From Convolutriloba macropyga (Eukaryota), in NCBI RefSeq assembly GCF_964194025.1, contig NC_134475.1, forward strand, positions 37,076,001-37,140,000: a stretch of 64,000 nucleotides of DNA. Direction: 5' to 3'. The notes under the pieces are model-generated. The model saw nothing but the letters and a program-made list of their open reading frames with translations. It did no database searches and had not been told where the DNA came from. A program made the position numbers and the translations under genes. Position 1 is the stretch's first letter. The number at the start of each line of letters is the position of its first letter. This document shows positions 21,901 to 62,705 of this stretch, one piece after another.

Positions 21901-24567
21901 ACTTGTTCATAGCATATCTTATGATCATAGTGGAACGGTTGACATGGTAGACCACAAATGTGCAATCCACAATCCATTTGTGTACCACACGGCACAAAAC
22001 AGAAATTAGTCGAGGCAAAAGGCTCTCCCCCGACAACCACACCCTTCTTAACATCAAGATGCTTACTACAATTCAAAATAAGCTTCTTCCCAAAGCAACC
22101 TTCCTGTCTTAACCTGTTCAAAAACGGAGTCCAAACTTCACAACTTCTTTTCTGACGCTCAAGTGTGGCAGCATTGCCTAAAAATATGACACCGGACTTT
22201 CCTCGACTTTGGGCAACACAGCGTCGATTGAGAACCCCAATGAAGCCCGATGTTGCGTTTGTGTTGCTTCGCACCAGCGATACAATCACGATATCATTTT
22301 CGTCACCCTGGAAGTTGTCTATTGTCTGAACATCGATCCATTTACCTGTCAGTCTCGGGTCAGATCTCATCAAACGTCTGAGTTCTCCAGTTTGTCCTTG
22401 ATACCCTGCTAAAACTGTTAAGCTTTTAGGGTTGTAGCCATTTGCATTGATGAGGTAGGATACCAGCTCTACTACTGCTTTCGCTTCAACTCGATTGCAG
22501 TAGCTTCGACCTCCAGTTTCTGAATAATCATGATCCCAGAAGAAACAGTTAGTTGCCAAACCCCGGACAGAAGGGTTTAAGGAAACACGAGGGTGATCTC
22601 TCAATTTTGGGTATATATCTGTCAAGTACATAGAAATATCGGGTCTCATTCTATTCTGGGTTTCTAGAGTAGAAAACTCGATGTCGTTGTTGATCAATCG
22701 TTCCATCATGCTTATATCGAAATGAAACTTGTGAACCAAATCATAGCATTCTACATTTGGTCTTAATTGCTTATGATCACCTATCATAACCAAATGCTTT
22801 ACGTGGTTCCCAAGTAGAGCTATCAGCTGCGCTTCATTAATTTCTGCGGCTTCTTCTACAATGATGACTTGAGGTTGGACAACATTCAATAAATCAGCGC
22901 GCATTGCAGCTCCGGTAGTTGTCATTGCAATCACTCTCGCTTTCTTCACTGCAACTGCCTCTCTCTGCAGTCTCATTTTGGTGCGTTGCTCTATCTTCAC
23001 ATGCAGCTGCTCAAACAACTCATCCATATCATTTAAAGCCCGTTCTCTTTGTTTCCAAACAAGATATTGAACTAAATGCAACCTGTTTGCTTCCTGTAAT
23101 GTCCAAATATCTTTCACCTTCCTCAGTGACCAAAAATCCGTTCTTTTTGCCAAAATCTCAGTTGCAGACCCAAGGAACTCCATGCATTTAGGACTGCCGT
23201 GACTGCTGCCATAGGGGTCAAATTTTGGACCCACCAAGTCGCTTTCCTGGACAATAGTTTGGGTCGTGAAATCGTTTTTTAAGCCAGCAGCCTCAAATCT
23301 TTCTTCTATCAACTTTTCCGTTTCAAGGGCCAATTCCAAGTCTTGTTCATCAGTATCATTATCAGTAGTAGAATTGCTATACAGAAACCTACTTTTGTCT
23401 CGTTTTGAGCTCAACTGCTTGATTTCCGTCTCTAAATGCTGCAGCTCTCTCTGGGCTGAGAGGGTAAAAGTGTCAGAAGGCAGCCATTGATCCAAAGATT
23501 CTACTACCTTTTCCACCAGGTAGTTAATTGCAGAGTAAAACTTCCTAGTATTTAAGTGATCGAAAATTGCCTCCCCCATCAATTCGATGCAACTGTAAGC
23601 TTTCAAATGGGTTTGCAGGTCGTAGTCACTTATTTTGTCCCGTAACATATTTGCAAGTTGCAATGAATCGAAGCACTTGAGGAGCACATCAACCTCTAGG
23701 GGACTCTCGACAATTTTTCGGAATTTCTTAAAAGCTGCGTTTATTTTCAAGTTCAAATCATCTATTTCGTGGCAAATTCTCAATTCAAACTCACTTGGTT
23801 TACCTAAGACATTCTTGAGCGAATACTGGGCCATTGTGTTATCTTTTGACTGTCCACCCAGACGCAAGAAACAACCCGGAGTTTGCAAAAAATTTGTACG
23901 CAATATCGCTCGAGAGAATTCATCCAGTGCATGATTCTTATAAGTGAGTACTAAAATTGGAGAGGTCACTGCTGGACCCGTTCTAAAGTCGGCTTTCTCA
24001 CTCAATTTAAGATCGAGCAACACGTTCGTTAAATGGACACCAAGGTATGTCTTCCCAGTTCCAGGAGGTCCCTGCACAATTGAAACACGGGTCTTCAACA
24101 TGTGTTTCATAGCCTCAAACTGGCTTCCATCCAATATACAATTTGACGAGTGTTCTGCTTCATGGAAAAAATTGTCAACATTTATTGCCGTGTCTCCATC
24201 TGTATATAGCTTGTTTAAACTAAACGTTGCGCCAGCATGGGCCGAAAATCTGAAGGGAAGCGCCTGAGCTAATATCAACTCATTACGAAATGCAAAATTT
24301 GCCGATGTCAGGTCTTGCATTGATTTCAGTACTGGTTGGTAGGAGGCAAACATTGTGGGAGCTTCTACTATAACTAACGAGCCATTTCTGGACACCAAAG
24401 TTTGCAAATCCTTGGCAAAAGTAGTGTTAGGAACGTCAATATACTCCACGACAACAGTGATAGAGCCATTTGCAAATTCATCGCTTCGTCTTTGTACTGC
24501 TCCCCACACAACATCCTCAGCAAAATTAGTTGCCGACACTGCCACCAGATTCCCTCGCAGAAAGTAC
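18915..24567 (-). CDS. ZNFX1: ZNFX1-like helicase, coding exon 2 (SF1 UPF1-like helicase, NF-X1 zinc fingers, two PARP-like domains)
   Basis: Uninterrupted ORF with GPPGTGKT, VEEAAE, IGDHKQLRP, QNRM, TIDNFQGDEND, CVAQSRGK and a long Cys/His array; acceptor tttttcacgcag|G at 24568/24567 in the phase needed to join exon 1. Confidence 0.93.
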
Positions 24568-26152
24568 CTGCGTGAAAAATGACTCTGGTTAATCGGATGC
24601 GCTATAAAAGCTGACAATGAAGATCGATAATGACCGGTCGTATATAATGTTCCAACATTGCATATGCAGATTAATTTATCAAAACTTGGAATCGTAAAAC
24701 TTCTTTAACTTCTTAAGAATAAGGTGTTCACCCTTAGCTCTTATTAACTGCTGTCTAGTGGCCGCAGGGCATCACAAAGAATACAGCCGCCACTTTTCTT
24801 ATTTTTGTTCCGGTTTTGTTTATAATTTGAGAAAATCTGGTCTTCAGAAGCTAAACTCTATTTCTCGTGCACAAAGATTAAGTATCACACTCATGGTGAC
24901 AAAAAACAAACTGAGCTGGGTAAAAAAATATGGTACCAAAAAGCTACGTACCACATAATTTCTACGCTTAAAGCATGATTAGAGCTTCATAAGCATTATT
25001 TGCGCAAAAGCGTGAAAAAAGTGTGAAATTTAAAAGTTTTAAGAAAAATTTCATTCTCAATTTCTCCGCTTGAACGGAAAAAGTGGCTAAACTGCTTTGA
25101 AAATTTTTTACGCTACGAGATGTCGGATTTTCATGACCAAAAATACAAAAACAACTCAACTTGAAACAAGGATCTAGTTCACAGTATATATACAAAGGTT
25201 ACCTAAAAATAACAGTTTCGAGGACAAAAAAATCTAGCGCAAGACCGCCAAAAATGTTCAAAAAACCCAAAAAGGAGTTAACGATGTTTTAACAGACCCC
25301 CAAAAACCTCACTGCAGCGTATTGAAGTGACTTCTCCTATATATTAAACGCGTGAGCTCTAAAGTGAGACAAAAATTTTTGCATGTTTAAGGGGCCTCTC
25401 GAAGTGCATGTTAAAAGCCGCATTGAGCAGCATGGTTAAGCGAACATATAGAGAGAGGTCAATGAAATAAAAGGAATAAAGTAGATGGGTGAGAACCGAA
25501 CCTGGAACAAAAGACTGTTAACCAGGCGCAGTTACGAAAAGGCTCAGAAGGTTTGAAAGTATGCTCAACCAGAGGGAGGATTTACTGTCCTGGGTACTAC
25601 GTGTTTCTTAAATGCTTCCGAACTAGAATTGAAGTTCTTATTGTAAACGTGTGTTTTCTGCAAAGTTTTAGCTTTACAGATTCTGCGCTTTTCTAGAATA
25701 CTCTTAGCTTTCAACTAAGTTTTTTACGCTTAATTTTGATTTTTGTGTGATCTCAAATGCTCTCAATCTTGAAATACTTTTATTGATACAATAAAAGCGA
25801 TTTTGAGAAACGGGGGTATGTAGTCGTTATAGTGCAGTTGGTAAGATGGAGGACTGCTATTCTGAGGGTCGAAGGTTCGAACTCGTGTTCAGTACCATTG
25901 CTGGTGTAAATGTTTAATCAACAGCATGCCACCAGTTGCTCGAGAGCACTTCTTGCGACGCTGATTCGTTTTATGTTCCTGTGTGTGCTTGGGGGATGAA
26001 AAATGTTAATCCTATATATTAAACGCGTGAGCTCTAAAATTGGACAAAATTTTGCGTGTTTAAGGGCCTTCTCGAAAGGTTTGTTTAAGAGCCGCATTGA
26101 GCAGAATGTTAACGAACATATCGAGAGAAGTTAATGACCGAAAAGCCTCAAA

Positions 26153-26224
26153 GTAGATGGGTGAGAACCGAACCTGGAACAAAACACTGTTAGTCAGGTG
26201 CAGTTACCACGAGGCTAAGAGGGC
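26153..26224 (-). pseudogene. Second tRNA-derived module, opposite strand (representative; in all units except the deleted last one)
   Basis: Minus strand GCCCTCT-TAGCCTCGTGGTAA...CTGA-CTAACAG...CCAGGTTCGGTTC followed by a T-run; the B-box has decayed to GGTTAGG in central units. Confidence 0.6.
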
Positions 26225-27166
26225 TTGAAAATATGCTCGCCAAGAGCGAGGATTTACTCTCTTGCGTACAACGTGTTTTGTAAATGCTCCCGAACTAAAG
26301 TTGAAGCTCTTACCGTAAACGTGTGTTTTCTGCAAACTTTTAGCTTTACAGATTGAGCGCTATTCTAGAGCACTCTTAGCTTTCAACTAAGTTTTTCACG
26401 CTTAAATTTGATTTCTGTGTGATCAAATGCTCTCAATCTGAAATATTTTTGATACAATAAACGCGATTTTGAGAAACGGTGGTATGTAGTTTTTAGAGTG
26501 CAGTTGGTAATATGCACGACTGCTACTCTGAGGGTCGATATTTCGATCCCTCGTTGGGTACCCTCCCTTTTGTGGACATGAAAAATTCTAATCAACCCAT
26601 GCCGCCTGTTTTTCGAGAGCAGATCTTGCAACGCTGAGTCGTATTATGTTCCTGTATGTGTGAGAGATGAGAAATGCTAGTCTTATGTATTAAAAGCGTG
26701 AGCTCTAAAGCCGTGTAAAATTTTTGCAAGTATAAGGGGCCTCTCGAAACGCTTGTTTAGCAGCCGCATTGAGCAGCATGGTTAACGAACATATCGAGAG
26801 AGGTCAATTACCTAAAACGCTCAAAGTAGATGGGCGAGAACCTAACCTGGAATAAAAGACCGTTAGTCAGGTGCAGTTACAACGAGGCTAAGAGGGCTTG
26901 AAAATATGCTCGCCCAGAAGGAGGAGTTACTCACCTGGGTAAAACGCGTTTTTTAAATGCACCCGAGCTAAGGTTGAAATTCTTGTAGTAAACGTGTGTT
27001 TTCTACAAAATTTCAGTTTTACAGATTCTGCGCTATTCTAGAACACTCTTAGCTTTCAACTAAGTTTTTTAAGCTTAATTTTGAATTTTGTGGGATCTCA
27101 AAGGCTCTCAATCTGAAATACAATTATTGATACAATGGACGCGATTTTGAGAAACAGTGATATGTA

Positions 27167-27239
27167 GTTGTTATAGTGCAGTTGGTAATATGTGAGACTG
27201 CTACTCTGAGGGTCGATAGTTCGAACCCTTGTTGGGTAT
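27167..27239 (+). pseudogene. tRNA-derived module (representative; one per array unit)
   Basis: A-box TAGTGCAGTTGG and B-box GTTCGAACC at tRNA spacing, TTTT just downstream; stems mispair, so not a functional tRNA. Confidence 0.8.
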
Positions 27240-30200
27240 CCTCCCTTTTGTGGACATGAAAATTTCTAATCAACCCATGCCGCCTGTTTTTCGAGAGCAG
27301 GTCTTGCAACGCTGAGTCGTTTTATCTTCCTGTATGTGTGAGAGATGAGAAATCCTAGTCCTATATATTAAAAGCGTGAGCTCTAAAGCGGTACAAAACT
27401 TTTGCAAGTATAAGGGGCCTCTCGAAACGCTTGTTTAGGAGCCGCATTGAGCAGCATGGTTAACGAACATATCGAGAGAGGTCAATCACCTAAAAAACTC
27501 AAAGTAGATGGGTGAGTACCTAAACTAGAATAAAAGACCGTTAGTCAGGTGCAGTTACAACGAAGTTAAAAGGGCTTGAAAATATGCTCGCCCAGAAGGA
27601 GGAGTTATTCTCCTGGGTAAAACGTGTTTTTTAAATGCTCCCGAACTAAGGTTGAAATTCTTGTAGTAAACGTGTGTTTTCTACAAAATTTCAGTTTTAC
27701 AGATTCTGCGCTATTCTAGAACACTCTTAGCTTTCAACTAAGTTTTTTAAGCTTAATTTTGAATTTTGTGTGATCTCAAAGGCTCTCAATCTGAAATACA
27801 ATTATTGATACAATGGACGCGATTTTGAGAAACAGTGATATGTAGTTGTTATAGTGCAGTTGGTAATATGTGAGACTGCTACTCTGAGGGTCGATAGTTC
27901 GAACCCTTGTTGGGTATCCTCCCTTTTGTGGACATGAAAATTTCTAATCAACCCATGCCGCCTGTTTTTCGAGAGCAGGTCTTGCAACGCTGAGTCGTTT
28001 TATCTTCCTGTATGTGTGAGAGATGAGAAATGCTAGTCCTATATATTAAAAGCGTGAGCTCTAAAGCGGTACAAAACTTTTGCAAGTATAAGGGGCCTCT
28101 CGAAACGCTTGTTTAGGAGCCGCATTGAGCAGCATGGTTAACGAACATATCGAGAGAGGTCAATCACCTAAAAAACTCAAAGTAGATGGGTGAGTACCTA
28201 AACTAGAATAAAAGACCGTTAGTCAGGTGCAGTTACAACGAAGTTAAAAGGGCTTGAAAATATGCTCGCCCAGAAGGAGGAGTTATTCTCCTGGGTAAAA
28301 CGTGTTTTTTAAATGCTCCCGAACTAAGGTTGAAATTCTTATAGTAAACGTGTGTTTCCTGCGAAACTTTAGTTTCACAGATTCTGCGCTATTCTAGAAC
28401 ACTCTTAGCTTTCAACTAAGTTTTTTAAGCTTAATTTTGATTTTTGTGTGATCTCAAATTCTCTCAATCTGAAATACTTTTTATTGGTACAATGAACGCG
28501 ATTTTGAGAAACGGTGATATGTAGTTGTTATAGTGCAGTTGGTAATATGCACGACTGCTACTCTGAGGGTCGATAGTTCGAACCCTCGTTGGGTACCCTC
28601 CCTTTTGTGGACATGAAAATTTCTAATCAACCCATGCCGCCTGTTTTTCGAGAGCAGGTCTTGCAACGCTGAGTCGTTTTATCTTCCTGTATGTGTGAGA
28701 GATGAGAAATGCTAGTCCTATATATTAAAAGCGTGAGCTCTAAAGCGGTACAAAACTTTTGCAAGTATAAGGGGCCTCTCGAAACGCTTGTTTAGGAGCC
28801 GCATTGAGCAGCATGGTTAACGAACATATCGAGAGAGGTCAATCACCTAAAAAACTCAAAGTAGATGGGTGAGTACCTAAACTAGAATAAAAGACCGTTA
28901 GTCAGGTGCAGTTACAACGAAGTTAAAAGGGCTTGAAAATATGCTCGCCCAGAAGGAGGAGTTATTCTCCTGGGTAAAACGTGTTTTTTAAATGCTCCCG
29001 AACTAAGGTTGAAATTCTTATAGTAAACGTGTGTTTCCTGCGAAACTTTAGTTTCACAGATTCTGCGCTATTCTAGAACACTCTTAGCTTTCAACTAAGT
29101 TTTTTAAGCTTAATTTTGATTTTTGTGTGATCTCAAATTCTCTCAATCTGAAATACTTTTTATTGGTACAATGAACGCGATTTTGAGAAACGGTGATATG
29201 TAGTTGTTATAGTGCAGTTGGTAATATGCACGACTGCTACTCTGAGGGTCGATAGTTCGAACCCTCGTTGGGTACCCTCCCTTTTGTGGACATGAAAATT
29301 TCTAATCAACCCATGCCGCCTCTTTTTCGAGAGCAGATCTTGTAACGCTGAGTCGTATTATGTTACTGTATGTGTGAGAGATGAGAAACGCTAATCCTAT
29401 ATAATAAACGCGTGAGCTCTAAGGCGGGACAAAAATTTTGCAAGTACAAGGGGCCTCTCGAAACGCTTGTTTAGGAGCCGCATTGAGCAGCATGGCTAAC
29501 GAACATATCGAGAGAGGTCAATCACCTAAAACGCTCAAAGTAGATGGGGGGTGAGAACCTAAACTAGAATAAAAGACCGTTAGTCAGGTGCAGTTACAAC
29601 GAAGTTAAGAGGGCTTGAAAATATGCTCGCCCAGAAGGAGGAGTTATTCTCCTGGGTAAAACGTGTTTTTTAACTGCTCCCGAACTAAGGTTGAAATTCT
29701 TATAGTAAACGTGTGTTTCCTGCGAAACTTTAGTTTCACAGATTCCGCGCTATTCTAGAACACTCTTAGCTTTCAACTAAGTCTTTTAAGCTTAATTTTG
29801 AATTTTGTGTGATCTCAAAGGCTCTCTATCTGAAATACAATTATTGATACAATGGACGCGATTTTGAGAAACAGTGATATGTAGTTGTTATAGTGCAGTT
29901 GGTAATATGTGAGACTGCTACTCTGAGGGTCGATAGTTCGAACCCTTGTTGGGTATCCACCCTTTTGTGGACATGAAAACTTCTAATCAACCCTTGCCGC
30001 CTGTTTTTCGAGAGCAGTTCCTGCAACGCTGAGTCGTTTTATGTTCCTGTATTTGTGAGAGAGGAGAAATGCTAATCCTATATAATAAACGCGTGAGCTC
30101 TAAAGCGGTACAAAACTTTTGCAGGTGCAAGGGGCCTCTCGAAACGCTTGTTTAGGAGCCGCATTGAGCAGCATGGTTAACGAACAAATCGAGAGAGGTC

Positions 30201-33200
30201 AATCACCTAAAAAGCTCAAAGTAGATGGGTGAGAACCTAACCTGGAATAAAAGGCCATTAGTCAGGTGCAGTTACAACGAGGCTAAGAGGGCTTGAAAAT
30301 ATACTCGCACAGAAGGAGGAGTTACTCTCCTGGGTAAAACGTGTTTTTTTAATGCTCCCGAACAGAAGTTGAAATTCTTATAGTAAACGTGTGTTTTCTA
30401 CAAAATTTTAGTTTTACAGATTCTGCGCTATTCTAGAACACTCTTAGCTTTCAACTAAGTTATTTATGCTTAATTTTGATTTTTGTGTGATCTCAAATGA
30501 TCTCAATCTGAAATACTTTAATTGATACAATGAACGCGATTTTGAGAAACGGTGATATGTAGTTGTTATAGTGCAGTTGGTAATATGTACGACTGCAACT
30601 CTGAGGGTCGAGAGTTCAAACCCGCGTTGGGTACTCTGGCTTTTGTGGACATGAAAATTTCTAATCAACCCATGCCGCCTGTTTTTCGAGAGCAGTTCTT
30701 GCGACGCTGAGTCGTATTATGTTCCTGTATGTGTGAGAGATGAGAAATGCTAGTCTTATATATTAAAAGCGTGAGCTCTAAAGCCGTGTAAAATTTTTGC
30801 AAGTATAAGGGGCCTCTCGAAACGCTTGTTTAGGAGCCACATTGAGCAGCATGATTAACGAACATATCGAGAGAGGTCAATCACCTAAAAAGCTCAAAGT
30901 AGATGGGTGAGAACCTAACCTGGAATAAAAGACCATTAGTCAGGTGCAGTTACAACGAGGCTAAGAGGGCTTGAAAATATACTCGCACAGAAGGAGGAGT
31001 TACTCTCCTGGGTAAAACGTGTTTTTTAAATGCTCCCGAACTGAGGTTGAAATTCTTATAGTAAACGTGTGTTTTCTGCAAAATTTTAGTTTTACAGATT
31101 CTGCGCTATTCTAGAACACTCTTAGCTTTCAACTAAGTTTTTCAAGCTTAATTTTGATTTTTGTGTGATCTCAAATTCTCTCAATCTGAAATACTTTTAT
31201 TGATACAATGAACGCGATTTTGAGAAACGGTAATATGTAGTTGTTATAGTGCAGTTGGTAATATGTGAGACTGCTACTCTGGGGGTCAATAGTTCGAACC
31301 CTTGTTGGGTACCCGCCCTTTTGTGGACATGAAAATTTCTAATCAACCCATGCCGCCTGTTTTTAGAGAGAAGTTCTTGCAATGCTGAGTCGATTTATGT
31401 TCCTGTGTGTTTGAGGGATGAGAGATACTAATACTATGTATTAAACGCGTGAGCTCTAAGATGGGATAAAGCTTTTGCATTTTTAAGTGGACTCTCCGAG
31501 CGCATGTTTAAGAGTCGCATTGAGCAGCATGTTTAAGAGGTCATATCGAAAGAGGTCAATGACCTAAAAGACTCAAAGTAGATGGGTGAGAACCTAACCT
31601 GGAATAAAAGACCATTAGTCAGGTGCAGTTACAACGAGGCTAAGAGGGCTTGAAAATATACTCGCACAGAAGGAGGAGTTACTCTCCTGGGTAAAACGTG
31701 TTTTTTAAATGCTCCCGAACTGAGGTTGAAATTCTTATAGTAAACGTGTGTTTTCTGCACAAATTTAGTTTTACAGATTCTGCGCTATACTAGAACACTC
31801 TTAGCTTTCAACTAAGTTTTTTAAGCTTAATTTTGATTTTTGTGTGATCTCAAATTCTCTCAATCTGAAAAACTTTTTTTGATACAATGAACGCGATTTT
31901 GAGAAACGGTAATATGTAGTTGTTATAGTGCAGTTGGTAATATGTGAGACTGCTACTCTGGGGGTCAATAGTTCGAACCCTTGTTGGGTACCCGCCCTTT
32001 TGTGGACATGAAAATTTCTAATCAACCCATGCCGCCTGTTTTTAGAGAGCAGTTCTTGCAATGCTGAGTCGTTTTACCTTCCTGTATGTGTGAGAGATGA
32101 GAAATGCTAGTCCTATATATTAAAAACGTGAGCTCTAAAGCGGTACAAAACTTTTGCAAGTATAAGGGGCCTCTCGAAACGCTTCTTTAGGAGCCGCATT
32201 GAGCAGCATGGTTAACGAACATATCGAGAGAGGTCAATCACCTAAAAAGCTCAAAGTGGATGGGTGACAACCTAACCTAGAATAAAAGACCGTTAGTCAG
32301 GTGCAGTTACAACGAAGTTAAGAGGGCTTGAAAATATGCTTGCCCAGAAGGAGGAGTTACTCCCCTGGGTAAAACCTGTTTTTTAAATGCTCCCAAACTA
32401 AGGTTGAAATACTTATATTAAACGTGTGTTTCCTGCAAAATTTTAGTTTTACAGATTCTGCGCTATTCTAGAACACTCTTAGCTTTCAACTAAGTTTTTT
32501 AAGTTTAATTTTGATTTTTGTGTGATCTCAAATTCTCTCAAAATCTGAAATACTTGTATTGATACAACGAACGCGATTTCGAGAAACGGTGATATGTAGT
32601 TGTTATAGTGCAGTTGGTAATATGTGAGACTGCTACTCTGGGGGTCGATAGTTCGAACCCTTGTTGGGTTCCCGCCCTTTTGTGGACATGAAAATTTCTA
32701 ATCAACCAATGCGCCTGTTTTTCGAGAGCAGTTCTTGCAACGCTGAGTCGTTTTATGTTCCTTTATGTGTGAGACGAGAAATGCTAATCCTATATATTAA
32801 ACGCGTGAGCTCTAAAGCGGTACAAACATTTTGCAAGTGTAAGGGGCCTCTCTAAACGCTTGTTTAGGAGCCGCATTGAGCAGCATGGTTAACGAACATA
32901 TCGAGAGAGGTCAATCACCTCAAAAGCTCAAAGTGGATGGGTGAGAACCTAACCTGGAATAAAAGAACATTAGTCAGGTGCAGTTACAACGAGGCTAAGA
33001 GGGCTTGAAAATATACTCGCACAGAAGGAGGAGTTACTCTCCTGGGTAAAACGTGTTTTTTAAATGCTCCCGAACTGAGGTTGAAATTCTTAGAGTAAAC
33101 GTTGTTTTCTGCAAAATTTTAGTTTTACAGATTCTGCGCTATTCTAGAACACTCTTAGCTTTCAACTAAGTTTTTTAAGCTTAATTTTGATTTTTGTGTG

Positions 33201-36200
33201 ATCTCAAATTCTCTCAATCTGATATACTTTTATTGATGCAATGAACGCGATTTCGAGAAACGGTGATATGTAGTTGTTATAGTGCAGTTGGTAATATGTG
33301 AGACTGCTACTCTGGGGGTCGATAGTTCGGACCCTTGTTGGGTACCCGCCCTTTTGTGGACATGAAAATTTCTTATCAACCCTTGCCGCCTGTTTTTCGA
33401 GAGCACTTCTTGCAATGCTGAGTCGTTTTATGTTCCTGTATGTGTGAGAGACGAGAAAAGCTAATCCTATATATTAAACGCGTGAGCTCTAAAGCGGTAC
33501 AAACATTTTGCAAGTGTAAGGGGCCTCTCGAAACGCTTGTTTAGGAGCCGCATTGAGCAGCATGGTTAACGAACAAATCGAGAGAGGTCAATCACCTAAA
33601 AAGCTCAAAGTGGATTGGTGAGAATCTAACCGGGAATAAAAGACCATTAGTCAGGTGCAGTTACAACGAGGCTAAGGGGGCTTGAAAATATACTCGCACA
33701 GAAGGAGGAGTTACTCTCCTGGGTAAAACGTGTTTTTTAAATGCTCCCGAACTGAGGTTGAAATTCTTAGAGTAAACGTGTGTTTTCTGCAAAATTTTAG
33801 TTTTACAGATTCTGCGCTATTCTAGAACACTCTTAGCTTTCAACTAAGTATTTTAAGCTTAATTTTGATTTTTGTGTGATCTCAAATTCTCTCAATCTGA
33901 TATACTTTTATTGATACAATGAACGCGATTTCGAGAAACGGTGATATGTAGTTGTTATAGTGCAGTTGGTAATATGTGAGACTGCTACTCTGGGGGTCGA
34001 TAGTTCGAACCCTTGTTGGGTACCCGCCCTTTTGTGGACATGGAAATTTCTAATCAACCCATGCCGCCTGTTTTTCGAGAGCAGTTCTTGCAACGCTGAG
34101 TCGTTTTATGTTCCTGTATGTGTGAGCGACGAGAAATGCTAATCCTATATATTAAACGCGTGAGCTCTAAAGCGGTACAAACATTTTGCAAGTGTAAGGG
34201 GCCTCTCGAAACGCTTGTTTAGGAGCCGCATTGAGCAGCATGGTTAACGAACATATCGAGAGAGGTCAATCACCTAAAAAGCTCAAAATGGATGGGTGAG
34301 AACCTAACCTGGAATAAAAGACCATTAGTCAGGTGCAGTTACAACGAGGCTAAGAGGGCTTGAAAATACACTCGCACAGAAGGAGGAGTTACTCTCCTGG
34401 GTAAAACGTGTTTTTTAAATGCTCCCGAACTGGGGTTGAAATTCTTATAGTAAACGTGTGTTTTCTGCAAAATTTTAGTTTTACAGATTCTGCGCTATTC
34501 TAGAACACTCTTAGCTTTCAACTAAGTTTTTCAAGCTTAATTTTGATTTTTGTGTGATCTCAAATTCTCTCAATCTGATATACTTTTATTGATACAATGA
34601 ACGCGATTTCGAGAAAAGGTGATATGTAGTTGTTATAGTGCAGTTGATAATATGTGAGACTGCTACTCTGGGGGTCGATAGTTCGAACCCTTGTTGGGTA
34701 CCCGCCCTTTTGTGGACATGAAAATTTCTAATCAACCCATGCCGCCTGTTTTTCGAGAGCAGTTCTTGCAACGCTGAGTCGTTTTATGTTCCGTTATGTG
34801 TGAGAGACGAGAAATGCTAATCCTATATATTAAACGCGTGAGCTCTAAAGCGGTACAAACATTTTGCAAGTGTAAGGGGCCTCTCGAAACGCTTGTTTAG
34901 GAGCCGCATCGAGCAGCATGGTTAACGAGCAGATCGAGAGAGGTCAACCACCTAAAAAGCTCAAAGTGGATGGGTGAGAACCTAACCTGGAATAAAAGAC
35001 CATTAGTCAGGTGCAGTTACAACGAGGCTAAGAGGGCTTGAAAATATACTCGCACAGAAGGAGGAGTTACTCTCCTGGGTAAAACGTGTTTTTTAAATGC
35101 TCCCGAACTGAGGTTGAAATTCTTAGAGTAAACGTTGTTTTCTGCAAAATTTTAGTTTTACAGATTCTGCGCTATTCTAGAACACTCTTAGCTTTCAACT
35201 AAGTTTTTTAAGCTTAATTTTGATTTTTGTGTGATCTCAAATTCTCTCAATCTGATATACTTTTTTTGATACAATGAACGCGATTTCGAGAAACGGTGAT
35301 ATGTAGTTGTTATAGTGCAGTTGGTAATATGTGAGACTGCTACTCTGGGGGTCGATAGTTCGAACCCTTGTTGGGTACCCGCCCTTTTGTGGACATGAAA
35401 ATTTCTTATCAACCCTTGCCGCCTGTTTTTCGAGAGCACTTCTTGCAACGCTGAGTCGTTTTATGTTCCTGTATGTGTGAGAGACGAGAAATACTAATCC
35501 TATATATTAAACGCGTGAGCTCTAAAGCGGTACAAACATTTTGCAAGTGTAAGGGGCCTCTCGAAACGCTTGTTTAGGAGCCGCATTGAGCAGCATGGTT
35601 AACGAACATATCGAGAGAGGTCAATCACCTGAAAAGCTCAAAGTGGATGGGTGAGAACCTAACCTGGAATAAAAGACCATTAGTCAGGTGCAGTTACAAC
35701 GAGGCTAAGAGGGCTTGAAAATATACTCGCACAGAAGGACGAGTTACTCTCCTGGGTAAAACGCAATTTTTAAATGCTCCCGAACTGAGGTTGAAATTCT
35801 CATAGTAAACGTGTGTTTTCTGCAAAATTTTAGTTTTACAGATTGTGCGCTATTCTAGAACACTCTTAGTTTTCAACTAAGTTTTTTAAGCTTAATTTTG
35901 ATTTTTGTGTGATCTCAAATTCTCTCAATCTGATATCCTTTTATTGATACAATGAACGGGATTTCGAGAAACGGTGATATGTAGTTGTTATAGTGCAGTT
36001 GGTAATATGTGAGACTGCTACTCTGGGGGTCGATGGTTCGAACCCTTGTTCGGTACCCGCCCTTTTGTGGACATGAAAATTTCTAATCAACCCTTGCCGC
36101 CTGTTTTTCGAGAGCAATTCTTGCAACGCTGAGTCGTTTTATGTTCCTGTATGTGTGACAGACGAGAAATGCTATTCCTATATATTAAACGCGTGAGCTC

Positions 36201-39200
36201 TAAAGCGGTACAAACACTTTGCAAGTGTAATGGGCCTCTCGAAACGCTTGTTTAGGAGCCGCATTGAGCAGCATGGTTAACGAACATATCGAGAGAGGTC
36301 AATCACCTAAAAAGCTCAAAGTGGATGGGTGAGAACTTAACCTGGAATAAAAGACCATTAGTCAGGTGCAGTTACAACGAGGCTAAGAGGGCTTGAAAAT
36401 ATACCTGCACAGAAGGAGGAGTTACTCTCCTGGGTAAAACGTGTTTTTTAAATGCTCCCGAACTGAGGTTGAAATTCTTATAGTAAACGTGTGTTTTCTC
36501 CAAAATTTTAGTTTTACAGATTTTGCGCTATTCTAGAACACTCTTAGTTTTCAACTAAGTTTTTTAAGCTTAATTTTGATTTTTGTGTGATCTCAAATTC
36601 TCTCAATCTGATATACTTTTATTGATACAATGAACGCGATTTCGAGAAACGGTGATATGTAGTTGTTATAGTGCAGTCGGTAATATGTGAGACTGCTACT
36701 CTGGGGGTCGATAGTTTAAACCCTTGTTGGGTACCCGCCCTTTTGTGGACATGAAAAATTCTAATCAACCCATGCCGCCTGTTTTTCGAGAGCAGTTCTT
36801 GCAACGCTGAGTCCTTTTATGTTCCTGAATGTGTGAGAGACGAGAAATGCGAATCCTATATATTAAACGCGTGAGCTCTAAAGCGGTACGAACATTTTGC
36901 AAGTGTAAAGGGCCTCTCGAAACGCTTAATTAGGAGCCGCATTGAGCAGCATGGTTAACGAACATATCGAGAGAGGTCAATCACCTAAAAAGCTCAAAGT
37001 GGATGGGTGAGAACCTAACCTGTAATAAAAGACCATTAGTCAGGTGCAGTTACAACAAGGCTAAGAGGGCTTGAAAATATACTCGCACAGAAGGAGGAGT
37101 TACTCTCCTGGGTAGAACTTGTTTTTTAAATGCTCCCGAACTGAGGTTGAAATTCCTATAGTAAACGTGTGTTTTCTGCAAAAATTTAGTTTTACAGATT
37201 CGGCGCTATTCTAGAACACTCTTAGTTTTCAACTAAGTTTTTTAAGCTTAATTTTGATTTTTGTGTGATCTCAAATTCTCTCAATCTGATATCCTTTTAT
37301 TGATACAATGAACGGGATTTCGAGAAACGGTGATATGTAGTTGTTATAGTGCAGTTGGTAATATGTGAGACTGCTACTCTGGGGGTCGATGGTTCGAACC
37401 CTTGTTCGGTACCCGCCCTTTTGTGGACATGAAAATTTCTAATCAACCCTTGCCGCCTGTTTTTCGAGAGCAATTCTTGCAACGCTGAGTCGTTTTATGT
37501 TCCTGTATGTGTGACAGACGAGAAATGCTATTCCTATATATTAAACGCGTGAGCTCTAAAGCGGTACAAACACTTTGCAAGTGTAATGGGCCTCTCGAAA
37601 CGCTTGTTTAGGAGCCGCATTGAGCAGCATGGTTAACGAACATATCGAGAGAGGTCAATCACCTAAAAAGCTCAAAGTGGATGGGTGAGAACTTAACCTG
37701 GAATAAAAGACCATTAGTCAGGTGCAGTTACAACGAGGCTAAGAGGTCTTGAAAATATACTCGCACAGAAGGAGGAGTTACTCTCCTGGGTAAAACGTGT
37801 TTTTTAAATGCTCCCGAACTGAGGTTGAAATTCTTATAGTAAACGTGTGTTTTCTCCAAAATTTTAGTTTTACAGATTTTGCGCTATTCTAGAACACTCT
37901 TAGTTTTCAACTAAGTTTTTTAAGCTTAATTTTGATTTTTGTGTGATCTCAAATTCTCTCAATCTGATATACTTTTATTGATACAATGAACGCGATTTCG
38001 AGAAACGGTGATATGTAGTTGTTATAGTGCAGTCGGTAATATGTGAGACTGCTACTCTGGGGGTCGATAGTTTAAACCCTTGTTGGGTACCCGCCCTTTT
38101 GTGGACATGAAAAATTCTAATCAACCCATGCCGCCTGTTTTTCGAGAGCAGTTCTTGCAACGCTGAGTCCTTTTATGTTCCTGTATGTGTGAGAGACGAG
38201 AAATGCGAATCCTATATATTAAATGCGTGAGCTCTAAAGCGGTACGAACATTTTGCAAGTGTAAAGGGCCTCTCGAAACGCTTAATTAGGAGCCGCATTG
38301 AGCAGCATGGTTAACGAACATATCGAGAGAGGTCAATCACCTAAAAAGCTCAAAGTGGATGGGTGAGAACCTAACCTGTAATAAAAGACCATTAGTCAGG
38401 TGCAGTTACAACAAGGCTAAGAGGGCTTGAAAACATACTCGCACAGAAGGAGGAGTTACTCTCCTGGGTAGAACTTGTTTTTTAAATGCTCCCGAACTGA
38501 GGTTGAAATTCCTATAGTAAACGTGTGTTTTCTGCAAAAATTTAGTTTTACAGATTCGGCGCTATTCTAGAACACTCTTAGTTTTCAACTAAGTTTTTTA
38601 AGCTTAATTTTGATTTTTGTGTGATCTCAAATTCTCTCAATCTGATATCCTTTTATTGATACAATGAACGGGATTTCGAGAAACGGTGATATGTAGTTGT
38701 TATAGTGCAGTTGGTAATATGTGAGACTGCTACTCTGGGGGTCGATGGTTCGAACCCTTGTTCGGTACCCGCCCTTTTGTGGACATGAAAATTTCTAATC
38801 AACCCTTGCCGCCTGTTTTTCGAGAGCAATTCTTGCAACGCTGAGTCGTTTTATGTTCCTGTATGTGTGACAGACGAGAAATGCTATTCCTATATATTAA
38901 ACGCGTGAGCTCTAAAGCGGTACAAACACTTTGCAAGTGTAATGGGCCTCTCGAAACGCTTGTTTAGGAGCCGCATTGAGCAGCATGGTTAACGAACATA
39001 TCGAGAGAGGTCAATCACCTAAAAAGCTCAAAGTGGATGGGTGAGAACTTAACCTGGAATAAAAGACCATTAGTCAGGTGCAGTTACAACGAGGCTAAGA
39101 GGGCTTGAAAATATACTCGCACAGAAGGAGGAGTTACCCTCCTGGGTAAAACGTGTTTTTTAAATGCTCCCGAACTGAGGTTGAAATTCTTATAGTAAAC

Positions 39201-42002
39201 GTGTGTTTTCTCCAAAATTTTAGTTTTACAGATTTTGCGCTATTCTAGAACACTCTTAGTTTTCAACTAAGTTTTTTAAGCTTAATTTTGATTTTTGTGT
39301 GATCTCAAATTCTCTCAATCTGATATACTTTTATTGATACAATGAACGCGATTTCGAGAAACGGTGATATGTAGTTGTTATAGTGCAGTCGGTAATATGT
39401 GAGACTGCTACTCTGGGGGTCGATAGTTTAAACCCTTGTTGGGTACCCGCCCTTTTGTGGACATGAAAAATTCTAATCAACCCATGCCGCCTGTTTTTCG
39501 AGAGCAGTTCTTGCAACGCTGAGTCCTTTTATGTTCCTGTATGTGTGAGAGACGAGAAATGCGAATCCTATATATTAAACGCGTGAGCTCTAAAGCGGTA
39601 CGAACATTTTGCAAGTGTAAAGGGCCTCTCGAAACGCTTAATTAGGAGCCGCATTGAGCAGCATGGTTAACGAACATATCGAGAGAGGTCAATCACCTAA
39701 AAAGCTCAAAGTGGATGGGTGAGAACCTAACCTGTAATAAAAGACCATTAGTCAGGTGCAGTTACAACAAGGCTAAGAGGGCTTGAAAATATACTCGCAC
39801 AGAAGGAGGAGTTACTCTCCTGGGTAGAACTTGTTTTTTAAATGCTCCCGAACTGAGGTTGAAATTCCTATAGTAAACGTGTGTTTTCTGCAAAAATTTA
39901 GTTTTACAGATTCGGCGCTATTCTAGAACACTTTTAGCTTTCCACTATGTTTTTTACGCATAATTTTGGTTTTTATGATCTCAAATGCTCTCAATCTGAA
40001 ATACTTTTATTGATACAATAAACGCAATTTTGAGAAACGGTGATATGAAGTTGTTATAGTGCAGTTGGTAATATGTACGACTGCAACTCTGAGGGTCGAG
40101 AGTTCAAACCCGTGTTGGGTACCCTGGCTTTTGTGAACATGAAAACTTCTAATCAACCCACGCCGCCTGTTTTTCGAGAGCAGTTCTACCGACGCTGAGT
40201 CGATTTATGTTCCTGTGTGTTTGAGGGATGAGAAATGCCAATCCTATGTATGAAACGCGTGAGCTCTAAGATGGGACAAAACTTTTGCATTTTTAAGTGA
40301 ACTCTCCGAGCGCATTTTTAAGAGCCGCATTGAGCAGCATGGTTAAGAGATCATACCGAAAGAGGTCAATGACCTAAAATACTCAATGTAGATGGGTGAG
40401 ATCCGAACTTGGGACGAAAGACTGTTAGTCAGGTGCAGTTACCAAGAAGTTAAAAGGGCTTGAACATATGCTCGCTTGGAAGGAGAGGTTACTCTCCTGG
40501 GTACAACGTGTTTTTTAAATGCTCCCGAACTAAAGTTGAAGTTCTTATTGTAATTGTGTGTTTTCTGCAAAAATTTAGTTTTACAGATTCTGCACTATTC
40601 TAGAACACTCTTAGCTTTCAACTACAATTTTTACGCTTAATTTCGATTTTTGTGTGATCTCAAATGCTCTCAATCTGAATTATTTTTATTGATACAATAA
40701 ACAAGATTTTGAGAAGCGGGTACATGTAGTTGTTACAGTGCAGTTGGTAATATGTACGACTGCTACTCTGAGGGTCGAGAGTTTAAACCCGTGTTGGGTA
40801 CCCTACCTTTTGTGGACATGAAAATCTCTAATCAACCCATGCCGCCTGTTTTTCGAGAGCAGTTTTTGCGAAGCTGAGTCGTTTTATGTTCCTGTGTGTT
40901 TGATGGATGAGAAATGCTAATCCTATATATTATACGCGTGAGCTCTAAGATGGGACAAAATTTTTCCATTTTTAAGGGGCCTCCAGGAGCTTATGTTTAA
41001 AAGCCGCATTGAGCAGCATGGTTAAGTGAACATATCGATAGATGTCAATGACCTAAAAGACTTAATGTAGATGGGTGAGATCCGAAAATGGGACGAAAGA
41101 CTGTTAGTCAGGTGCAGTTACCATGAGGCCTAGAGGGCTTGAGCATATGCTCGCTTAGAAGGAGAAGTTACTCTCCTGGGTACGTGTTCTTTAAATGCTC
41201 CCGAACTAAATTTGGAGTTCTTATAGTAATTGTGTGTTTTCTGCAAAATTATAGTTTAACAGATTCTGCGCTACTCTAGAACACTCTTAGCTTTCAACTA
41301 AGTTTTTTACGTATAATTTTGTTTTTTAGTGATCTCAAATGCTCTCAATCTGAAATACTTTTATTGATACAATAAACGCGATTTTGAGAAACGGGGGTAT
41401 GTAGTTCTTTTAGTGCAGTTGGTAATATGTCGGACTGCTACTCGGAGGGTTGATAGTTCGAATCAGTGCTTGTAAGCCTCCCTTTTGTGGACATGAAAAT
41501 TTCTAATCAACCCATGCCGCCTGTTTTTCGAGAGCAGTTCTTGCGACGCTGAGTCATTTTATGTTCCTGTGTGTTTGAGGGATGAGAAATGCTAATCCTA
41601 TATATTAAACGCTTGAGCTCTCAGATGGAACAAAATTTTTGCTTTTTTAAGGGCCTCTCAAAGCGCATGTTTAAGAGCCCCATTAGGAGAACTTTCAACT
41701 AAAGTTTACACGCTTTACTTTTTGGTTTTGTGTGATCTCAAATGCTCTCAATCTGAAATATGTTGAATGATACGATAAAAGTGATTGTAAGAAACGTTGG
41801 TATGTAGTCGTTATAGTGCAGTTTGTAAGATGGAGGACTGCCACTCTGAAGGTCGAAGGTTCGAATCCGTGTCGGATAACCTCATTTTTGTAGACATATA
41901 AATTTCTAATCAACACCATGCCCCCTGTTGTTCGAGAGCACTTCTTGCGACGCTGAGTCGTTTTATGTTCCTGTGTTTGTGTTTGGGGGATGAAAATACT
42001 AA

Positions 42003-43250
42003 TATAATATATTAAAATTAACTCGCGCTCGAACGCAATGGTTAACTACGCTCCTGACTTCACATGTTTTAACGATCCTTAAACTTGCAGCCTATACAGC
42101 CATGCTTAAGTGCCTGATCTGCAAATTCTTTGTTGCTCTTTAGCCGTACAGCTTAGCAAAAATAGCGAGACAAAAAATCAATTGACCAAAATCTTGCCTA
42201 TGTAGCCACCACCGATAGACAACAGCAACAGGCGTCGGTAGCTCAAAAGAATAGATCTGTAGATGTGAAGAGAGGGGAATGGGTTCGAGCCCGAGTAGGG
42301 GAGGAAAAGTTTTCATAATGTACGGGGATGAAAAATGTACGCGGAGTTGGTTGTCTTTTTTCACTTCTTCATTTGTTTGCTTTTATTTTTTACTTATATC
42401 TTCGTTTCCTTCTTTCTCTTAGCCTTCATCTTTTATATCTTTCTCCATTTCTTTCTCTTCCTTTTATCTAATATATTAAATGTAAGTCGAAATTGAGCGC
42501 ATTGATTAACAGCGCTCCTATCGTCATATGTTTTAACAATCCTTAAACATGCAACCTACACGACCATTCTTAAGCGCCTGATCTGCAAATGTTTTTTACT
42601 CATTAAGCATACAGCTTGGCAAAAACAATCGAGACCAAAAGGCCATTGACCAAAGTTTTGAGTATGAAGCCACTTCTTTAGACAACAGCAACAGGCGTCG
42701 GTAGTACAAGGGATTAGAAATGTGGCTGTGAAGAGAGGGTCAAGGATTCGATCCCTAGTAGGTGCGAAAAAGGATGCATAGTGTACTGGGATAAAAAATG
42801 GGGAAATGAGTTTCCCTTACCCTTCATTTTTTGCTTTTATTTGTTACTTGTTTATAGTAATTATCAGTCGCAATTGAGCACAATGGTCAACAGCACTCCT
42901 ATCGCAATGTGTTTTAGGGGTCCTTAATGATGCATCCTAGCGTAATAAATGCGTTTTGAGACGCGCTTTACCATCATTTTTAAGCTCCTATTACGCACAT
43001 TTTTTTCGCACTCATTAGGCATGCGGTATAGCAAAGAAGCAAGTCACAAACGCCATTGTCCAGAAATTTGCTGTAGAAAGACAAGTGCAATATGTATAGA
43101 TAGCTTAGGTGGTGAGACCTATGGTTGTTGAGCGAGGGGCATGGGTTCCAGATCGAGTTGGTGCGAAACAGAAACCTTTACGAAACCTTCTTTTGAAACT
43201 TCCAATCTTGTAAATGATTTTCTTATGATTTTACGTGCCCGCTAGTAACA
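42003..43250 (+). repeat. Three diverged ~400-465-bp sister units, each with a tRNA-like module
   Basis: Units at ~42003, ~42467 and ~42850; tRNA-like segments at ~42232-42303 (GGTTCGAGCCC), ~42695-42767 and ~43092-43165; a CTAG|T occurs at ~43242-43246. Confidence 0.75.
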
Positions 43251-58464: not shown

Positions 58465-58917
58465 GGTGGCGGTCAAGCAAGCCGATAGGTAAGCAAGCCA
58501 AATTTTGAAAATCAGGTCAATTAAGCCGAAAAATTTTGAGATTTAAGCCGAAAAATTTTGAGAAAATTAAGCCGCAAAATTACGGCCTAATTGACCTGAT
58601 TCTCTCTTGGGCGCGCTTCGCGGGCGTCGCGGCTTTGCCGCGATAACCGGCCCGCGGTTTCCGGATTATATACCACAGCGGATGAGAGGCATGGCCATGG
58701 ACAGCGGTCCGCTGAAGCCCGTAACCCCTAGAGGTCTGAAAATTGACGTATTTTTGTTTCTTTGGTGCATTGGAATACATTATGCTGTGTAATACTGCGC
58801 CTTGTTGATTGTAACGGTTAACAATGTATTATTTCTGATAGATTAGATAACTATTACATAACTTTCGGCTTGCTTTAATGTCGGCTTACTTTTCCTTCGG
58901 CTTGCTTTGCGTTCACC
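58465..58917. mobile_element. MITE with 9-bp TSD (Mutator/Merlin-like)
   Basis: CAGACTTTG at 58456-58464 and 58918-58926; imperfect TIR GGTG.....AAGCAAGCCGA; internal AAGCCG/CGGCTT repeats. Confidence 0.8.
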
Positions 58918-61900: not shown

Positions 61901-62705
61901 ATTTGACAAAAACGACGCAAGAAACGACAACAGAACGACGAAGAAACGATCATTTCATACACTTATAAGACGACTTAAACGACGGAAAGAAATGAAAACG
62001 ACGAAAACTACAATTTCTTACAAAATATTGTCGCTTTTTCGTCGTTGTCCTCAACACGGGGCAACAGGGAGGGGGAATTCAGGGTAGCGCCAAGCTGGCC
62101 TATGGGATCCTGTCACAATCCAACCAAAAAACGTTCCTCACGGTACTAACAACTTAATTGTTCGCCCGGATATCAATATCAGGACTCCCAAATGACATCA
62201 TGATTCACTCATGCAGATTCGCCATTATTGGCGATAAAATGGTAGCGATCAGAAAATACAAGGAGGTACATTTGCGACCAGTAACCTTACAAGAAGGCAT
62301 CAATTCACTAACAAGGGAGCTTTATAAACCTAACAAGTGATCAGCTTGTACGAATCAAAAATCAGGAGGTGGAACGCTACTCATTGTGAGAAAAAGTTAA
62401 ATATGAAACTCTGGAGAAGATTTTAATTATCTTAGGCCGTCTCATTTGAAAAAAATGTGTCGAGTTCAATTCTACAGCTAAGTAGCAACAACGATTTAGT
62501 ATTGGTCCAGCCTACAAATAACCATAATAGTACCAAAACTTGTTCATTAGTGATCCACTTAAAAGAATTGACCGCGTATCATGCGATGGCGTGAAGTAAT
62601 TCTTTTAGGTGATATCATTTCCACAATAAAAAGGGAACAAAAAGCTGCAGTGATTGTTCCGTACGCATTAGATATTAGTAACCAAAAATCAACTGGACAC
62701 AGTAA
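58819..62705. repeat. Tandem duplication, ~1.94-kb period
   Basis: taacaatgtattatttctgatagat at 58819 and 60763; ORFs at 59780 and 61723 are offset by 1943. Confidence 0.95.
59559..60123. mobile_element. CCC...GGG TIR MITE with internal tRNA-like module (second copy at 61502-62060)
   Basis: 13-bp TIR CCCGTGTTGAGGA (perfect in copy 2); (AAACGA)n interior; minus-strand TAGAGCAGTGG...GGTTCGAATCC at ~59727-59801. Confidence 0.7.

What the first reader, a model, noticed from the sequence alone, without database searches (positions are those of the whole stretch)
25480..41885. Each unit carries two back-to-back tRNA-derived Pol III-like modules
Seen: a + strand module (e.g. 27167-27239; A-box, B-box, then TTTT) and a - strand module (e.g. 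26224-26153; a T5 run follows in many units). They point away from each other within a unit and toward each other across each unit junction. The + module is colinear without gaps with metazoan tRNA-Lys(UUU) as I recall it (AGACT..TA.TCTGAGGGTC.A..GTTC), but its loop reads GCT/GCA/GCC and stems mispair. Inference: about 49 A/B-box modules could give short Pol III RNAs or act as clustered TFIIIC/insulator sites, and may be how the element secures transcription or open chromatin.
Basis: partly seen in the sequence, partly recalled or inferred. Interest (0 to 1): 0.72.

Follow-up and report, generated by a model that had tools for sequence, protein, structure and literature searches.

The report
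Decayed tRNA cassettes inside Helitron-like repeats
Each 678-base unit of this repeat array carries a worn-out tRNA gene copy that keeps the layout of an RNA polymerase III gene, plus a far more eroded second one on the other strand. Both are inherited parts of a rolling-circle (Helitron-like) jumping-gene family, and nothing yet shows that they are used.

Summary
The array (window 25335-41996) holds 24 full and one internally deleted 678-bp unit, with 25 plus-strand and 24 minus-strand modules, 49 in all, at the stated places and orientations.

- **Plus module:** it is clearly tRNA-derived. A covariance model built from this genome's own tRNAs hits all 25 copies (8.5-26.3 bits). Rfam tRNA gives 16 bits against a cut-off of 29. 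It aligns without gaps to the genome's tRNA-Lys, though the isotype is only weakly resolved. Its cloverleaf is broken. 18 of 25 copies keep all B-box invariants and 24 of 25 a T4 run.
- **Minus module:** it gets no covariance signal in any copy. A58 is changed in all 24 units and C56 in 20 of 24. Only at family level is its box pair plus T-run unlikely by chance (about 0.1%).
- **Context:** the units belong to a dispersed, non-coding Helitron-like family (5' TC, 3' CTAG, A|T target). The copy here spans 25335-43245. The plus cassette is the only internal stretch shared with a second unit type.
- **Expression:** it could not be tested, because the only public runs found are DNA.

The scan has already noted tRNA-like cassettes in other mobile elements of this genome (Convolutriloba macropyga). 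I class this as a new variant of a known kind, with function unproven.

The parts
25335..43245 (+). Whole non-coding Helitron-like element: starts with TC (TCCTATATATTAAA...), ends with ...CGCTAG, followed by T
   Evidence: The 5' end is shared by 18 independent loci. The 3' CTAG|T end is shared by 9 independent loci plus the window.
25335..41996 (+). Tandem array of 24 full 678-bp units plus one internally deleted unit (41599-41996)
   Evidence: A 2-unit higher-order repeat at 35.5-39.6 kb is seen.
25823..41881 (+). The 25 plus-strand tRNA-derived cassettes, one per unit. Starts: 25823, 26489, 27167, 27845, 28524, 29203, 29884, 30562, 31240, 31919, 32599, 33273, 33951, 34629, 35306, 35984, 36662, 37340, 38018, 38696, 39374, 40050, 40729, 41404, 41807. 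Each is about 74 nt.
   Evidence: Model R1 hits all 25 at 8.5-26.3 bits.
35984..36066 (+). Best-scoring plus cassette: A-box 35991-36002, anticodon-loop position 36015-36021 (CTGCTAC), B-box 36035-36045, T4 at 36063-36066
   Evidence: R1 gives 26.3 bits. Rfam RF00005 gives 16 bits against a cut-off of 29. The sequence is shown.
25481..41138 (-). The 24 minus-strand box-pair relics, one per full unit. Low coordinates: 25481, 26153, 26826, 27504, 28182, 28861, 29543, 30221, 30899, 31578, 32256, 32933, 33610, 34288, 34966, 35643, 36321, 36999, 37677, 38355, 39033, 39711, 40388, 41067. Each is about 72 nt and read right to left.
   Evidence: Motif anchors come and box states. No covariance hit.
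35632..35714 (-). Example minus relic: A-box-like 35707->35697, B-box-like 35664->35654 (GGTTAGGTTCT, key C changed to A), T-run 35635->35632
41997..43245 (+). Three units of a second, roughly 400-470-bp type that end the element. Each has its own plus-strand tRNA-like cassette (about 42233-42305, 42695-42766, 43094-43165).
   Evidence: Sequence. R1 gives 5.2-6.5 bits, which is borderline. The cassette is the only significant similarity to the 678-bp unit. The same tail is present in other loci.

Best explanation
The modules are relics of tRNA genes that belong to the repeat unit of a non-coding, Helitron-like (rolling-circle) mobile-element family of the acoel Convolutriloba macropyga. They did not evolve in this array. 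They came with the element and were multiplied passively when the unit was amplified in tandem.

The plus cassette descends from a class-I tRNA gene, with Lys the best match. It has lost its cloverleaf but keeps the type-2 Pol III layout of A-box, B-box and T-run in about 18 of 25 units. Those copies could still bind TFIIIC and might give an RNA of about 80 nt.

The minus relic is much older or more decayed. It lacks B-box invariants in every unit and is most likely inert here.

My inference, not shown: the plus cassette was kept by the element lineage because a TFIIIC/Pol III entry site helps the element, for example by keeping its chromatin open or shielded. Within this array the copies are drifting without visible constraint.
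For: - **tRNA origin of the plus cassette.** All 25 copies are hit by a model built from the genome's own tRNAs, filters off, and in the window only 2 further hits at E<=1 lie outside the array. RF00005 gives 16 bits. The cassette is the single peak in a both-strand scan of the unit for tRNA similarity, with a score of 25 against a median of 10. It aligns without gaps to tRNA-Lys at 45/73.
- **Gene-like layout.** The T-run lies within the distance seen at real tRNA genes here, where 159 of 178 have T4+ within 40 nt.
- **Inherited, not local.** The same modules are in the family consensus built from 48 units at about 25 other loci. The family is dispersed on many chromosomes.
- **Helitron-like ends.**
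- **Retention in the lineage.** The cassette is the only internal stretch with significant similarity (E=1e-5) between the 678-bp unit and the tail unit type.
- **Drift in the array.** Units with a dead B-box (AGTTTAAACCC) were amplified alongside intact ones in a 2-unit higher-order repeat.
- **Minus relic.** At family level the box pair plus T-run is expected in about 0.1% of random units.
Against: - No RNA or chromatin data exist, so use by Pol III or TFIIIC is untested.
- After insertion the plus A- and B-boxes are no better conserved than the rest of the unit: 41st and 20th percentile across 22 independent loci.
- The similarity between unit types could reflect two separate captures of similar tRNAs, or recombination, rather than retention.
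- The Lys assignment is weak. Arg scores 43/73, and only 7 isotypes could be sampled.
- The autonomous Helitron partner was not identified.
- The minus relic has no support beyond motifs.
Confidence: 0.6

Rival explanations
1. One reading: both modules are working Pol III units or TFIIIC sites, so the array is a cluster of about 49 such sites that gives short RNAs or insulates and opens chromatin for the element.
For: - The plus cassette has near-consensus boxes, correct spacing and a terminator.
- The minus region is the best-conserved part of the unit across 22 independent loci, at the 95th percentile.
- Earlier notes of this scan report similar cassettes in several other mobile-element classes of this genome. 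I did not check them.
- TFIIIC binding to SINE and Alu boxes with chromatin effects is documented in mammals (PMC3744447, PMC7014570).
Against: - The minus module has A58 changed in all units and in the family consensus, C56 changed in 20/24 units, and A14 lost.
- It gets no covariance signal anywhere.
- 7 of 25 plus modules have lost a B-box invariant.
- There is no constraint on the plus boxes after insertion.
- No expression data are available.
Confidence: 0.2
2. Pure cargo: the rolling-circle element once picked up one or two tRNA genes or pseudogenes, as Helitrons pick up host fragments. These have been neutral passengers ever since, with no role for the element or the host.
For: - The cloverleaf is lost and predicted folding is no better than shuffled sequence (z -1.2 and -0.4).
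- The boxes decay at the average rate after insertion.
- Dead and intact copies are amplified alike in the array.
Against: - The cassette is the one internal segment shared by two otherwise diverged unit types.
- No flanking similarity to present tRNA-Lys loci shows a recent capture.
- By the scan's unchecked notes the pattern recurs in many element classes of this genome.
Confidence: 0.3
3. The modules are heads of tRNA-derived SINEs that inserted into an ancestral unit, the minus one in reverse. They are SINE fragments rather than tRNA gene copies.
For: - A broken cloverleaf with kept boxes is typical of SINE heads.
- In a rough alignment, the minus relic lies in a segment absent from the second unit type, as an insertion would.
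Against: - A T-run follows each module within about 5-10 nt, as at tRNA genes. A SINE would have a body and tail there.
- No poly(A) or simple-repeat tail and no duplication flank the modules.
- No separate SINE family with these heads was looked for successfully.
Confidence: 0.12
4. The minus module is not tRNA-derived at all. It is a chance pair of box-like motifs in a conserved part of the unit that serves something else.
For: - No covariance signal.
- 30/73 identity at best to any sampled tRNA.
- 6/21 threaded pairs.
- In the array consensus the motif pair occurs in 3.5% of random units.
- A perfect 13-nt palindrome sits next to it in the family consensus.
Against: In the family consensus, the A-box with 1 mismatch, the B-box with 2, the right spacing and a T-run together occur in about 0.1% of random units. 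That threshold was chosen after seeing the data.
Confidence: 0.3

Closest known systems
TRIMp3 elements: Cassandra (5S-derived), Helenus (tRNA-derived) and Ajax (PMC10886601). Cassandra also forms long tandem arrays (PMC7215508).
   Same: A non-coding mobile element carries a small-RNA-gene-derived stretch whose Pol III boxes are kept while the RNA fold is lost. Copy numbers are high and tandem arrays occur.
   Different: Those are LTR retrotransposons that need an RNA template, so a Pol III promoter has an obvious use. Here the carrier has Helitron-type ends, with no LTRs. It should move as DNA, and it carries a second, opposed relic.
tRNA-derived SINE heads and SINE-derived satellites (PMC10702118)
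   Same: A degenerate tRNA with A- and B-boxes, amplified to many copies. Satellites can arise from such sequence.
   Different: The cassette is internal (unit 488-561), not at the 5' end of a retroposed unit. It is followed at once by a T-run. The unit boundaries are TC...CTAG, not a LINE-type tail with target duplications.
Non-autonomous Helitrons with tandem or concatemeric structure and captured host fragments
   Same: 5' TC, 3' CTAG, insertion next to A and T, head-to-tail units, non-coding cargo.
   Different: I found no report of a Helitron family whose repeat unit carries a tRNA-derived Pol III-type cassette. The library searches found none, but the library is incomplete.
Tandem tRNA gene clusters, such as the silenced Arabidopsis Ser/Tyr cluster (PMC12308677, PMC7544208), and this genome's own tRNA clusters
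   Same: Many tRNA-type Pol III units in head-to-tail repeats.
   Different: Those encode real tRNAs scoring 60-76 bits. These score 8-26 bits, have no valid cloverleaf and no coherent anticodon.
tDNA, ETC and SINE-borne TFIIIC sites acting on chromatin (PMC3395662, PMC3744447, PMC7014570)
   Same: A B-box alone can recruit TFIIIC with effects on chromatin.
   Different: Nothing has been measured in this animal. Only about 18 plus modules keep the needed residues.

Membership tests
Functional tRNA gene | Cloverleaf scoring above the Rfam RF00005 cut-off (29 bits), or detected by ARAGORN | tested here: not met
   ARAGORN finds none in the window. RF00005 gives 16 bits for the best plus copy and nothing for the minus one. 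Real tRNAs of this genome score 44-76 bits.
Functional tRNA gene | Paired stems and an anticodon coherent with the body | tested here: not met
   10-12 of 21 pairs by threading against 21 of 21 for real tRNAs. The loop reads GCT, GCA or GCC on a Lys-like body.
Type-2 Pol III promoter cassette (tRNA-type) | A-box and B-box with the invariant residues, about 30-60 nt apart | tested here: met
   Plus module: the A-box has at most 1 mismatch in nearly all units, and the B-box invariants G53 T54 T55 C56 A58 C61 are kept in 18/25. Minus module: not met. A58 is changed in 24/24 and C56 in 20/24.
Type-2 Pol III promoter cassette (tRNA-type) | T-run terminator shortly downstream | tested here: met
   T4 follows in 24/25 plus modules and T4-T6 in 24/24 minus modules. 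The distances match those at real tRNA genes here.
Type-2 Pol III promoter cassette (tRNA-type) | Transcription by Pol III or binding of TFIIIC | not testable with these tools
   No RNA runs were found. The four runs holding the sequence show an even depth of about 50-fold over unique DNA, so they are DNA.
tRNA-derived SINE | tRNA-like head at the 5' end of the mobile unit, LINE-type or A-rich tail, target-site duplication | tested here: not met
   The head is internal. The unit and element ends are TC...CTAG with an A|T target. No A-rich tail is present.
Helitron (non-autonomous) | 5' TC and 3' CTRR ends | tested here: met
   18 of 18 loci start with TCC(T)ATA.... 9 of 9 independent 3' ends, plus the window, read CTAG.
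Helitron (non-autonomous) | Insertion between A and T without target duplication | tested here: inconclusive
   T follows CTAG in 9/9 loci and A precedes TC in 14/18. In the window the preceding base is C. No empty sites were compared.
Helitron (non-autonomous) | Subterminal 3' hairpin, and a RepHel-coding partner with the same ends | not tested
   Only a short GC-rich near-palindrome (GCGGGCCTGC) was seen before CTAG. Helitron Rep domains are present in the genome, 90 matches with some open frames of about 2500 aa.
TRIMp3 (Cassandra, Helenus, Ajax) | Two LTRs that carry the small-RNA-derived stretch and flank an internal region with primer-binding site and polypurine tract | tested here: not met
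   The units abut head to tail. Loci start at unit position 1 and end in a non-repeated tail with CTAG. I did not search for a primer-binding site.

The most novel reading that the evidence does not exclude
In this acoel, mobile elements of unrelated classes routinely carry a tRNA-derived TFIIIC/Pol III entry site as a working part. That would include rolling-circle DNA elements, which need no RNA copy to move. The site would keep their chromatin open or shield them from silencing. Arrays like this one would then place about 18 clustered TFIIIC sites just upstream of, or within, a ZNFX1-like helicase gene.
Probability: 0.15. Interest if true: 0.8.

Novelty: new variant of a known kind. Interest (0 to 1): 0.5.

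Why it matters
Small-RNA-gene-derived promoters are known in elements that move through RNA: SINEs, Cassandra and Helenus. There the promoter makes the template. A rolling-circle DNA element has no such need. A tRNA-type cassette kept in its repeat unit, and shared by two diverged unit types, therefore points either to repeated neutral capture or to a different use of the Pol III machinery, such as open chromatin, boundary function or protection from silencing. The family has roughly a thousand unit copies (a rough depth ratio), and the scan's notes report similar cassettes in other element classes of this genome. One Pol III/TFIIIC occupancy experiment or one small-RNA library in this animal could therefore settle the question for many families at once.

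Tried and rejected
- **Standard tRNA and RNA-family scans.** ARAGORN at default settings and Rfam at gathering scores found nothing in the window. Rfam at E<=10 on 17.5 kb and on 681 nt also gave no tRNA hit. A hit appeared only on a 106-nt search.
- **ARAGORN with relaxed thresholds.** At 85% it picks up 6 plus modules as Ser(GCT), close to the 1-4 hits seen in shuffled sequence.
- **Retroelement reading.** At first the copies seemed to have one constant and one variable end, which suggested a Penelope-like or retrozyme repeat on the other strand. I rejected this. No hammerhead or other ribozyme match was found. The "variable end" proved to be an internally deleted last unit followed by a shared tail of about 1 kb ending in CTAG|T.
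- **Recent capture of a tRNA-Lys gene with its flanks.** Similarity to tRNA-Lys loci stops at the tRNA body.
- **A stable alternative RNA fold.** Neither module folds better than shuffles.
- **Expression.** The four runs that hold the array are DNA.
- **TRF** misses the array because its longest period is 500.
Full report
**What is there**

The window is eukaryotic DNA. Its assembly size, 1,175,981,408 bases, matches the published Convolutriloba macropyga assembly of 1,175.98 Mb (PMC13650328). From 25335 to 41996 a 678-bp unit is repeated head to tail, 24 full units and one internally deleted unit. TRF missed it only because its period limit is 500. In unit coordinates the minus module runs 218->147 and the plus module 488-561. 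They diverge within a unit and converge across junctions.

**The plus module**

ARAGORN and Rfam at curated thresholds find no tRNA. I took real tRNAs from the same genome (178 genes read out with ARAGORN, 86 distinct sequences). I aligned 16 of them and built a cloverleaf covariance model, R1.

- With filters off, R1 hits all 25 plus modules at 8.5-26.3 bits, for example 27167-27241 at 24.6 bits.
- Over the whole 64-kb window only two other hits reach E<=1.
- Rfam's general tRNA model gives 16 bits (cut-off 29) when only 106 nt are searched.

A both-strand sliding scan of the unit against the genome's tRNAs shows one peak, on the plus module (score 25; median 10; 95th percentile 14.6; best partner tRNA-Lys CUU). 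Threaded without gaps, the family consensus matches tRNA-Lys(UUU) at 45/73, Lys(CUU) at 43/73 and Arg(UCG) at 43/73. So the gapless alignment to tRNA-Lys is real, but the isotype is only weakly resolved, and I could sample only seven isotypes.

The cloverleaf is broken: 10-12 of 21 pairs by threading, against 21 of 21 for real tRNAs. The RNA folds no better than shuffles. The anticodon position reads GCT in 22 units, GCA in 2 and GCC in 1.

The promoter layout survives:
- The A-box is TAGTGCAGTTGG in 18 units.
- All six T-arm residues that never vary in this genome's tRNAs are kept in 18 of 25 units.
- T4 lies 5 nt past the end in 24 of 25 units. This matches real tRNA genes here, of which 159 of 178 have T4+ within 40 nt.

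**The minus module**

The motif pair and a T4-T6 run are present in all 24 units, but the evidence for a tRNA origin is weak.

- R1 gives no hit at these positions, in the window or in 13 other loci of the family.
- RF00005 gives nothing at E<=10 on 106 nt.
- The similarity scan shows no peak.
- The best threaded identity is 30/73.
- Only 6 of 21 pairs form.
- A58 is G in every unit and in the family consensus. C56 is changed in 20 of 24 units, with only the four edge units keeping it. A14 is lost.

In Markov-simulated units, a box pair as good as the array consensus with a T-run appears in 3.5% of cases. One as good as the family consensus appears in about 0.1% (thresholds chosen after seeing the data). 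I read it as a probable, much more decayed tRNA-gene relic that is inert in this array.

**Context: what the unit belongs to**

The unit is dispersed. A search of the assembly gave 111 matches from 717 candidates on many chromosomes, at 76-85% identity. Summed contig depth on the unit is about a thousand times that of flanking unique DNA (a rough figure).

- Every locus starts at unit position 1, TCC(T)ATATATTAAA, preceded by A in 14 of 18 loci.
- After one to eight units comes an internally deleted unit. Then comes a shared tail of about 1 kb with a CT-rich tract and a second, roughly 400-bp unit type.
- The element ends in ...GCCTGCTAG followed by T, then unrelated DNA, in nine independent loci and in the window at 43242-43246.

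These are Helitron-type ends, and the copy here spans 25335-43245. The termini tests above are my own.

The genome holds at least 90 Helitron Rep-domain matches, some in open frames of about 2500 aa. The array also grew in place. R1 scores alternate 26.3/20.1 with 1356-nt spacing between 35.5 and 39.6 kb, which is a 2-unit higher-order repeat.

**Does the cassette matter to the element?**

- *For.* The second unit type has its own plus-strand cassette (42233-42305, 42695-42766, 43094-43165; borderline R1 scores of 5-6.5 bits here and up to 16 bits in another locus). That cassette is the only internal stretch with significant similarity to the 678-bp unit (71% over 62 nt, E=1e-5). The next best stretch is at E 0.2-0.55.
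- *Against.* Across 22 independent loci the plus A- and B-boxes are no better conserved than the rest of the unit (41st and 20th percentile). The minus region is slightly better conserved (95th percentile), but the whole range is narrow, 0.87-0.96. In the array, dead B-box variants were amplified as readily as intact ones.

There is thus a hint of retention at the level of the element lineage and none of constraint after insertion.

**Expression**

The run search found four runs from one study, none on record as RNA. Laid on 20400-26007, they cover exon and non-coding unique DNA evenly at about 45-55-fold with single long contigs, so they are DNA. Whether any RNA is made remains open.

**Comparison with known systems**

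Small-RNA-derived Pol III promoters are known in SINEs and in the LTR elements Cassandra, Helenus and Ajax. There the boxes are conserved while the RNA fold is lost (PMC10886601), and Cassandra forms tandem arrays (PMC7215508). SINE-derived satellites are described (PMC10702118). TFIIIC sites on tDNAs, ETC sites and SINEs affect chromatin (PMC3395662, PMC3744447, PMC7014570). Full-text searches found no Helitron family with such a cassette, but the library is incomplete.

The scan's earlier, mostly unchecked notes report tRNA-like cassettes in other Helitron-like arrays, MITEs, LTR elements, LINE leaders and Polintons of this same genome. So the scan has seen this theme before on other DNA. 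In this window I saw one more case myself: a 1.94-kb tandem duplicate at 58.8-62.7 kb with a minus-strand cassette in each copy.

**Verdict**

The plus module holds in full. The minus module holds only as a motif relic.
The tRNA origin and the Pol III layout of the plus cassette hold. At most about 18 modules are plausible sites, not 49. Function is untested.
- I class it as a new variant of a known kind: a small-RNA-gene-derived cassette carried by a rolling-circle-type DNA element.

Noticed in passing
window 58819-62666 (cassettes at 59729-59798 and 61672-61741, minus strand): A second tandem duplicate of about 1.94 kb. Each copy carries a tRNA-like cassette (R1 17.8 bits) with A-box TAGAGCAGTGG, B-box GGTTCGAATCC and a T6 run. 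It is not related to the 678-bp family.
   Followed up: partly
unit positions 122-134, e.g. window 35618-35630; family loci L031-L060: The family consensus holds a perfect 13-nt palindrome, AGGTCAATGACCT, shaped like an inverted-repeat nuclear-receptor site. It lies next to the minus relic. It is exact in 20 of 48 family units and has one change (AGGTCAATCACCT) in 15 array units.
   Followed up: partly
window 35497-39564: A two-unit (1356-bp) higher-order repeat within the array, in which intact and dead B-box variants alternate. It shows growth in place by unequal exchange rather than only by rolling-circle concatenation.
   Followed up: partly
L046, L049, L053, L055, L057 (array on contig C16) and the ends of most loci: Mini-units of about 117 nt join unit positions 1-7 directly to about 565-678, right after the plus cassette. 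Five dispersed copies also stop at position 566. This looks like a recurrent breakpoint at the cassette's 3' edge.
   Followed up: no
window 18915-24617, minus strand: A 1900-aa open frame of a ZNFX1-like helicase ends about 720 bp from the array's start. The array lies upstream of this frame or in an intron of the gene. Which of the two was not resolved.
   Followed up: no
window 24888-25261: Another high-copy repeat directly left of the element, with summed contig depth in the thousands against about 50 on unique DNA.
   Followed up: no
L044:3556-3637 (minus) and L061:8932-9004 (plus): Further tRNA-like sequences near other copies of the family, scoring 35 and 27 bits with R1. They belong to other elements or pseudogenes.
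   Followed up: no
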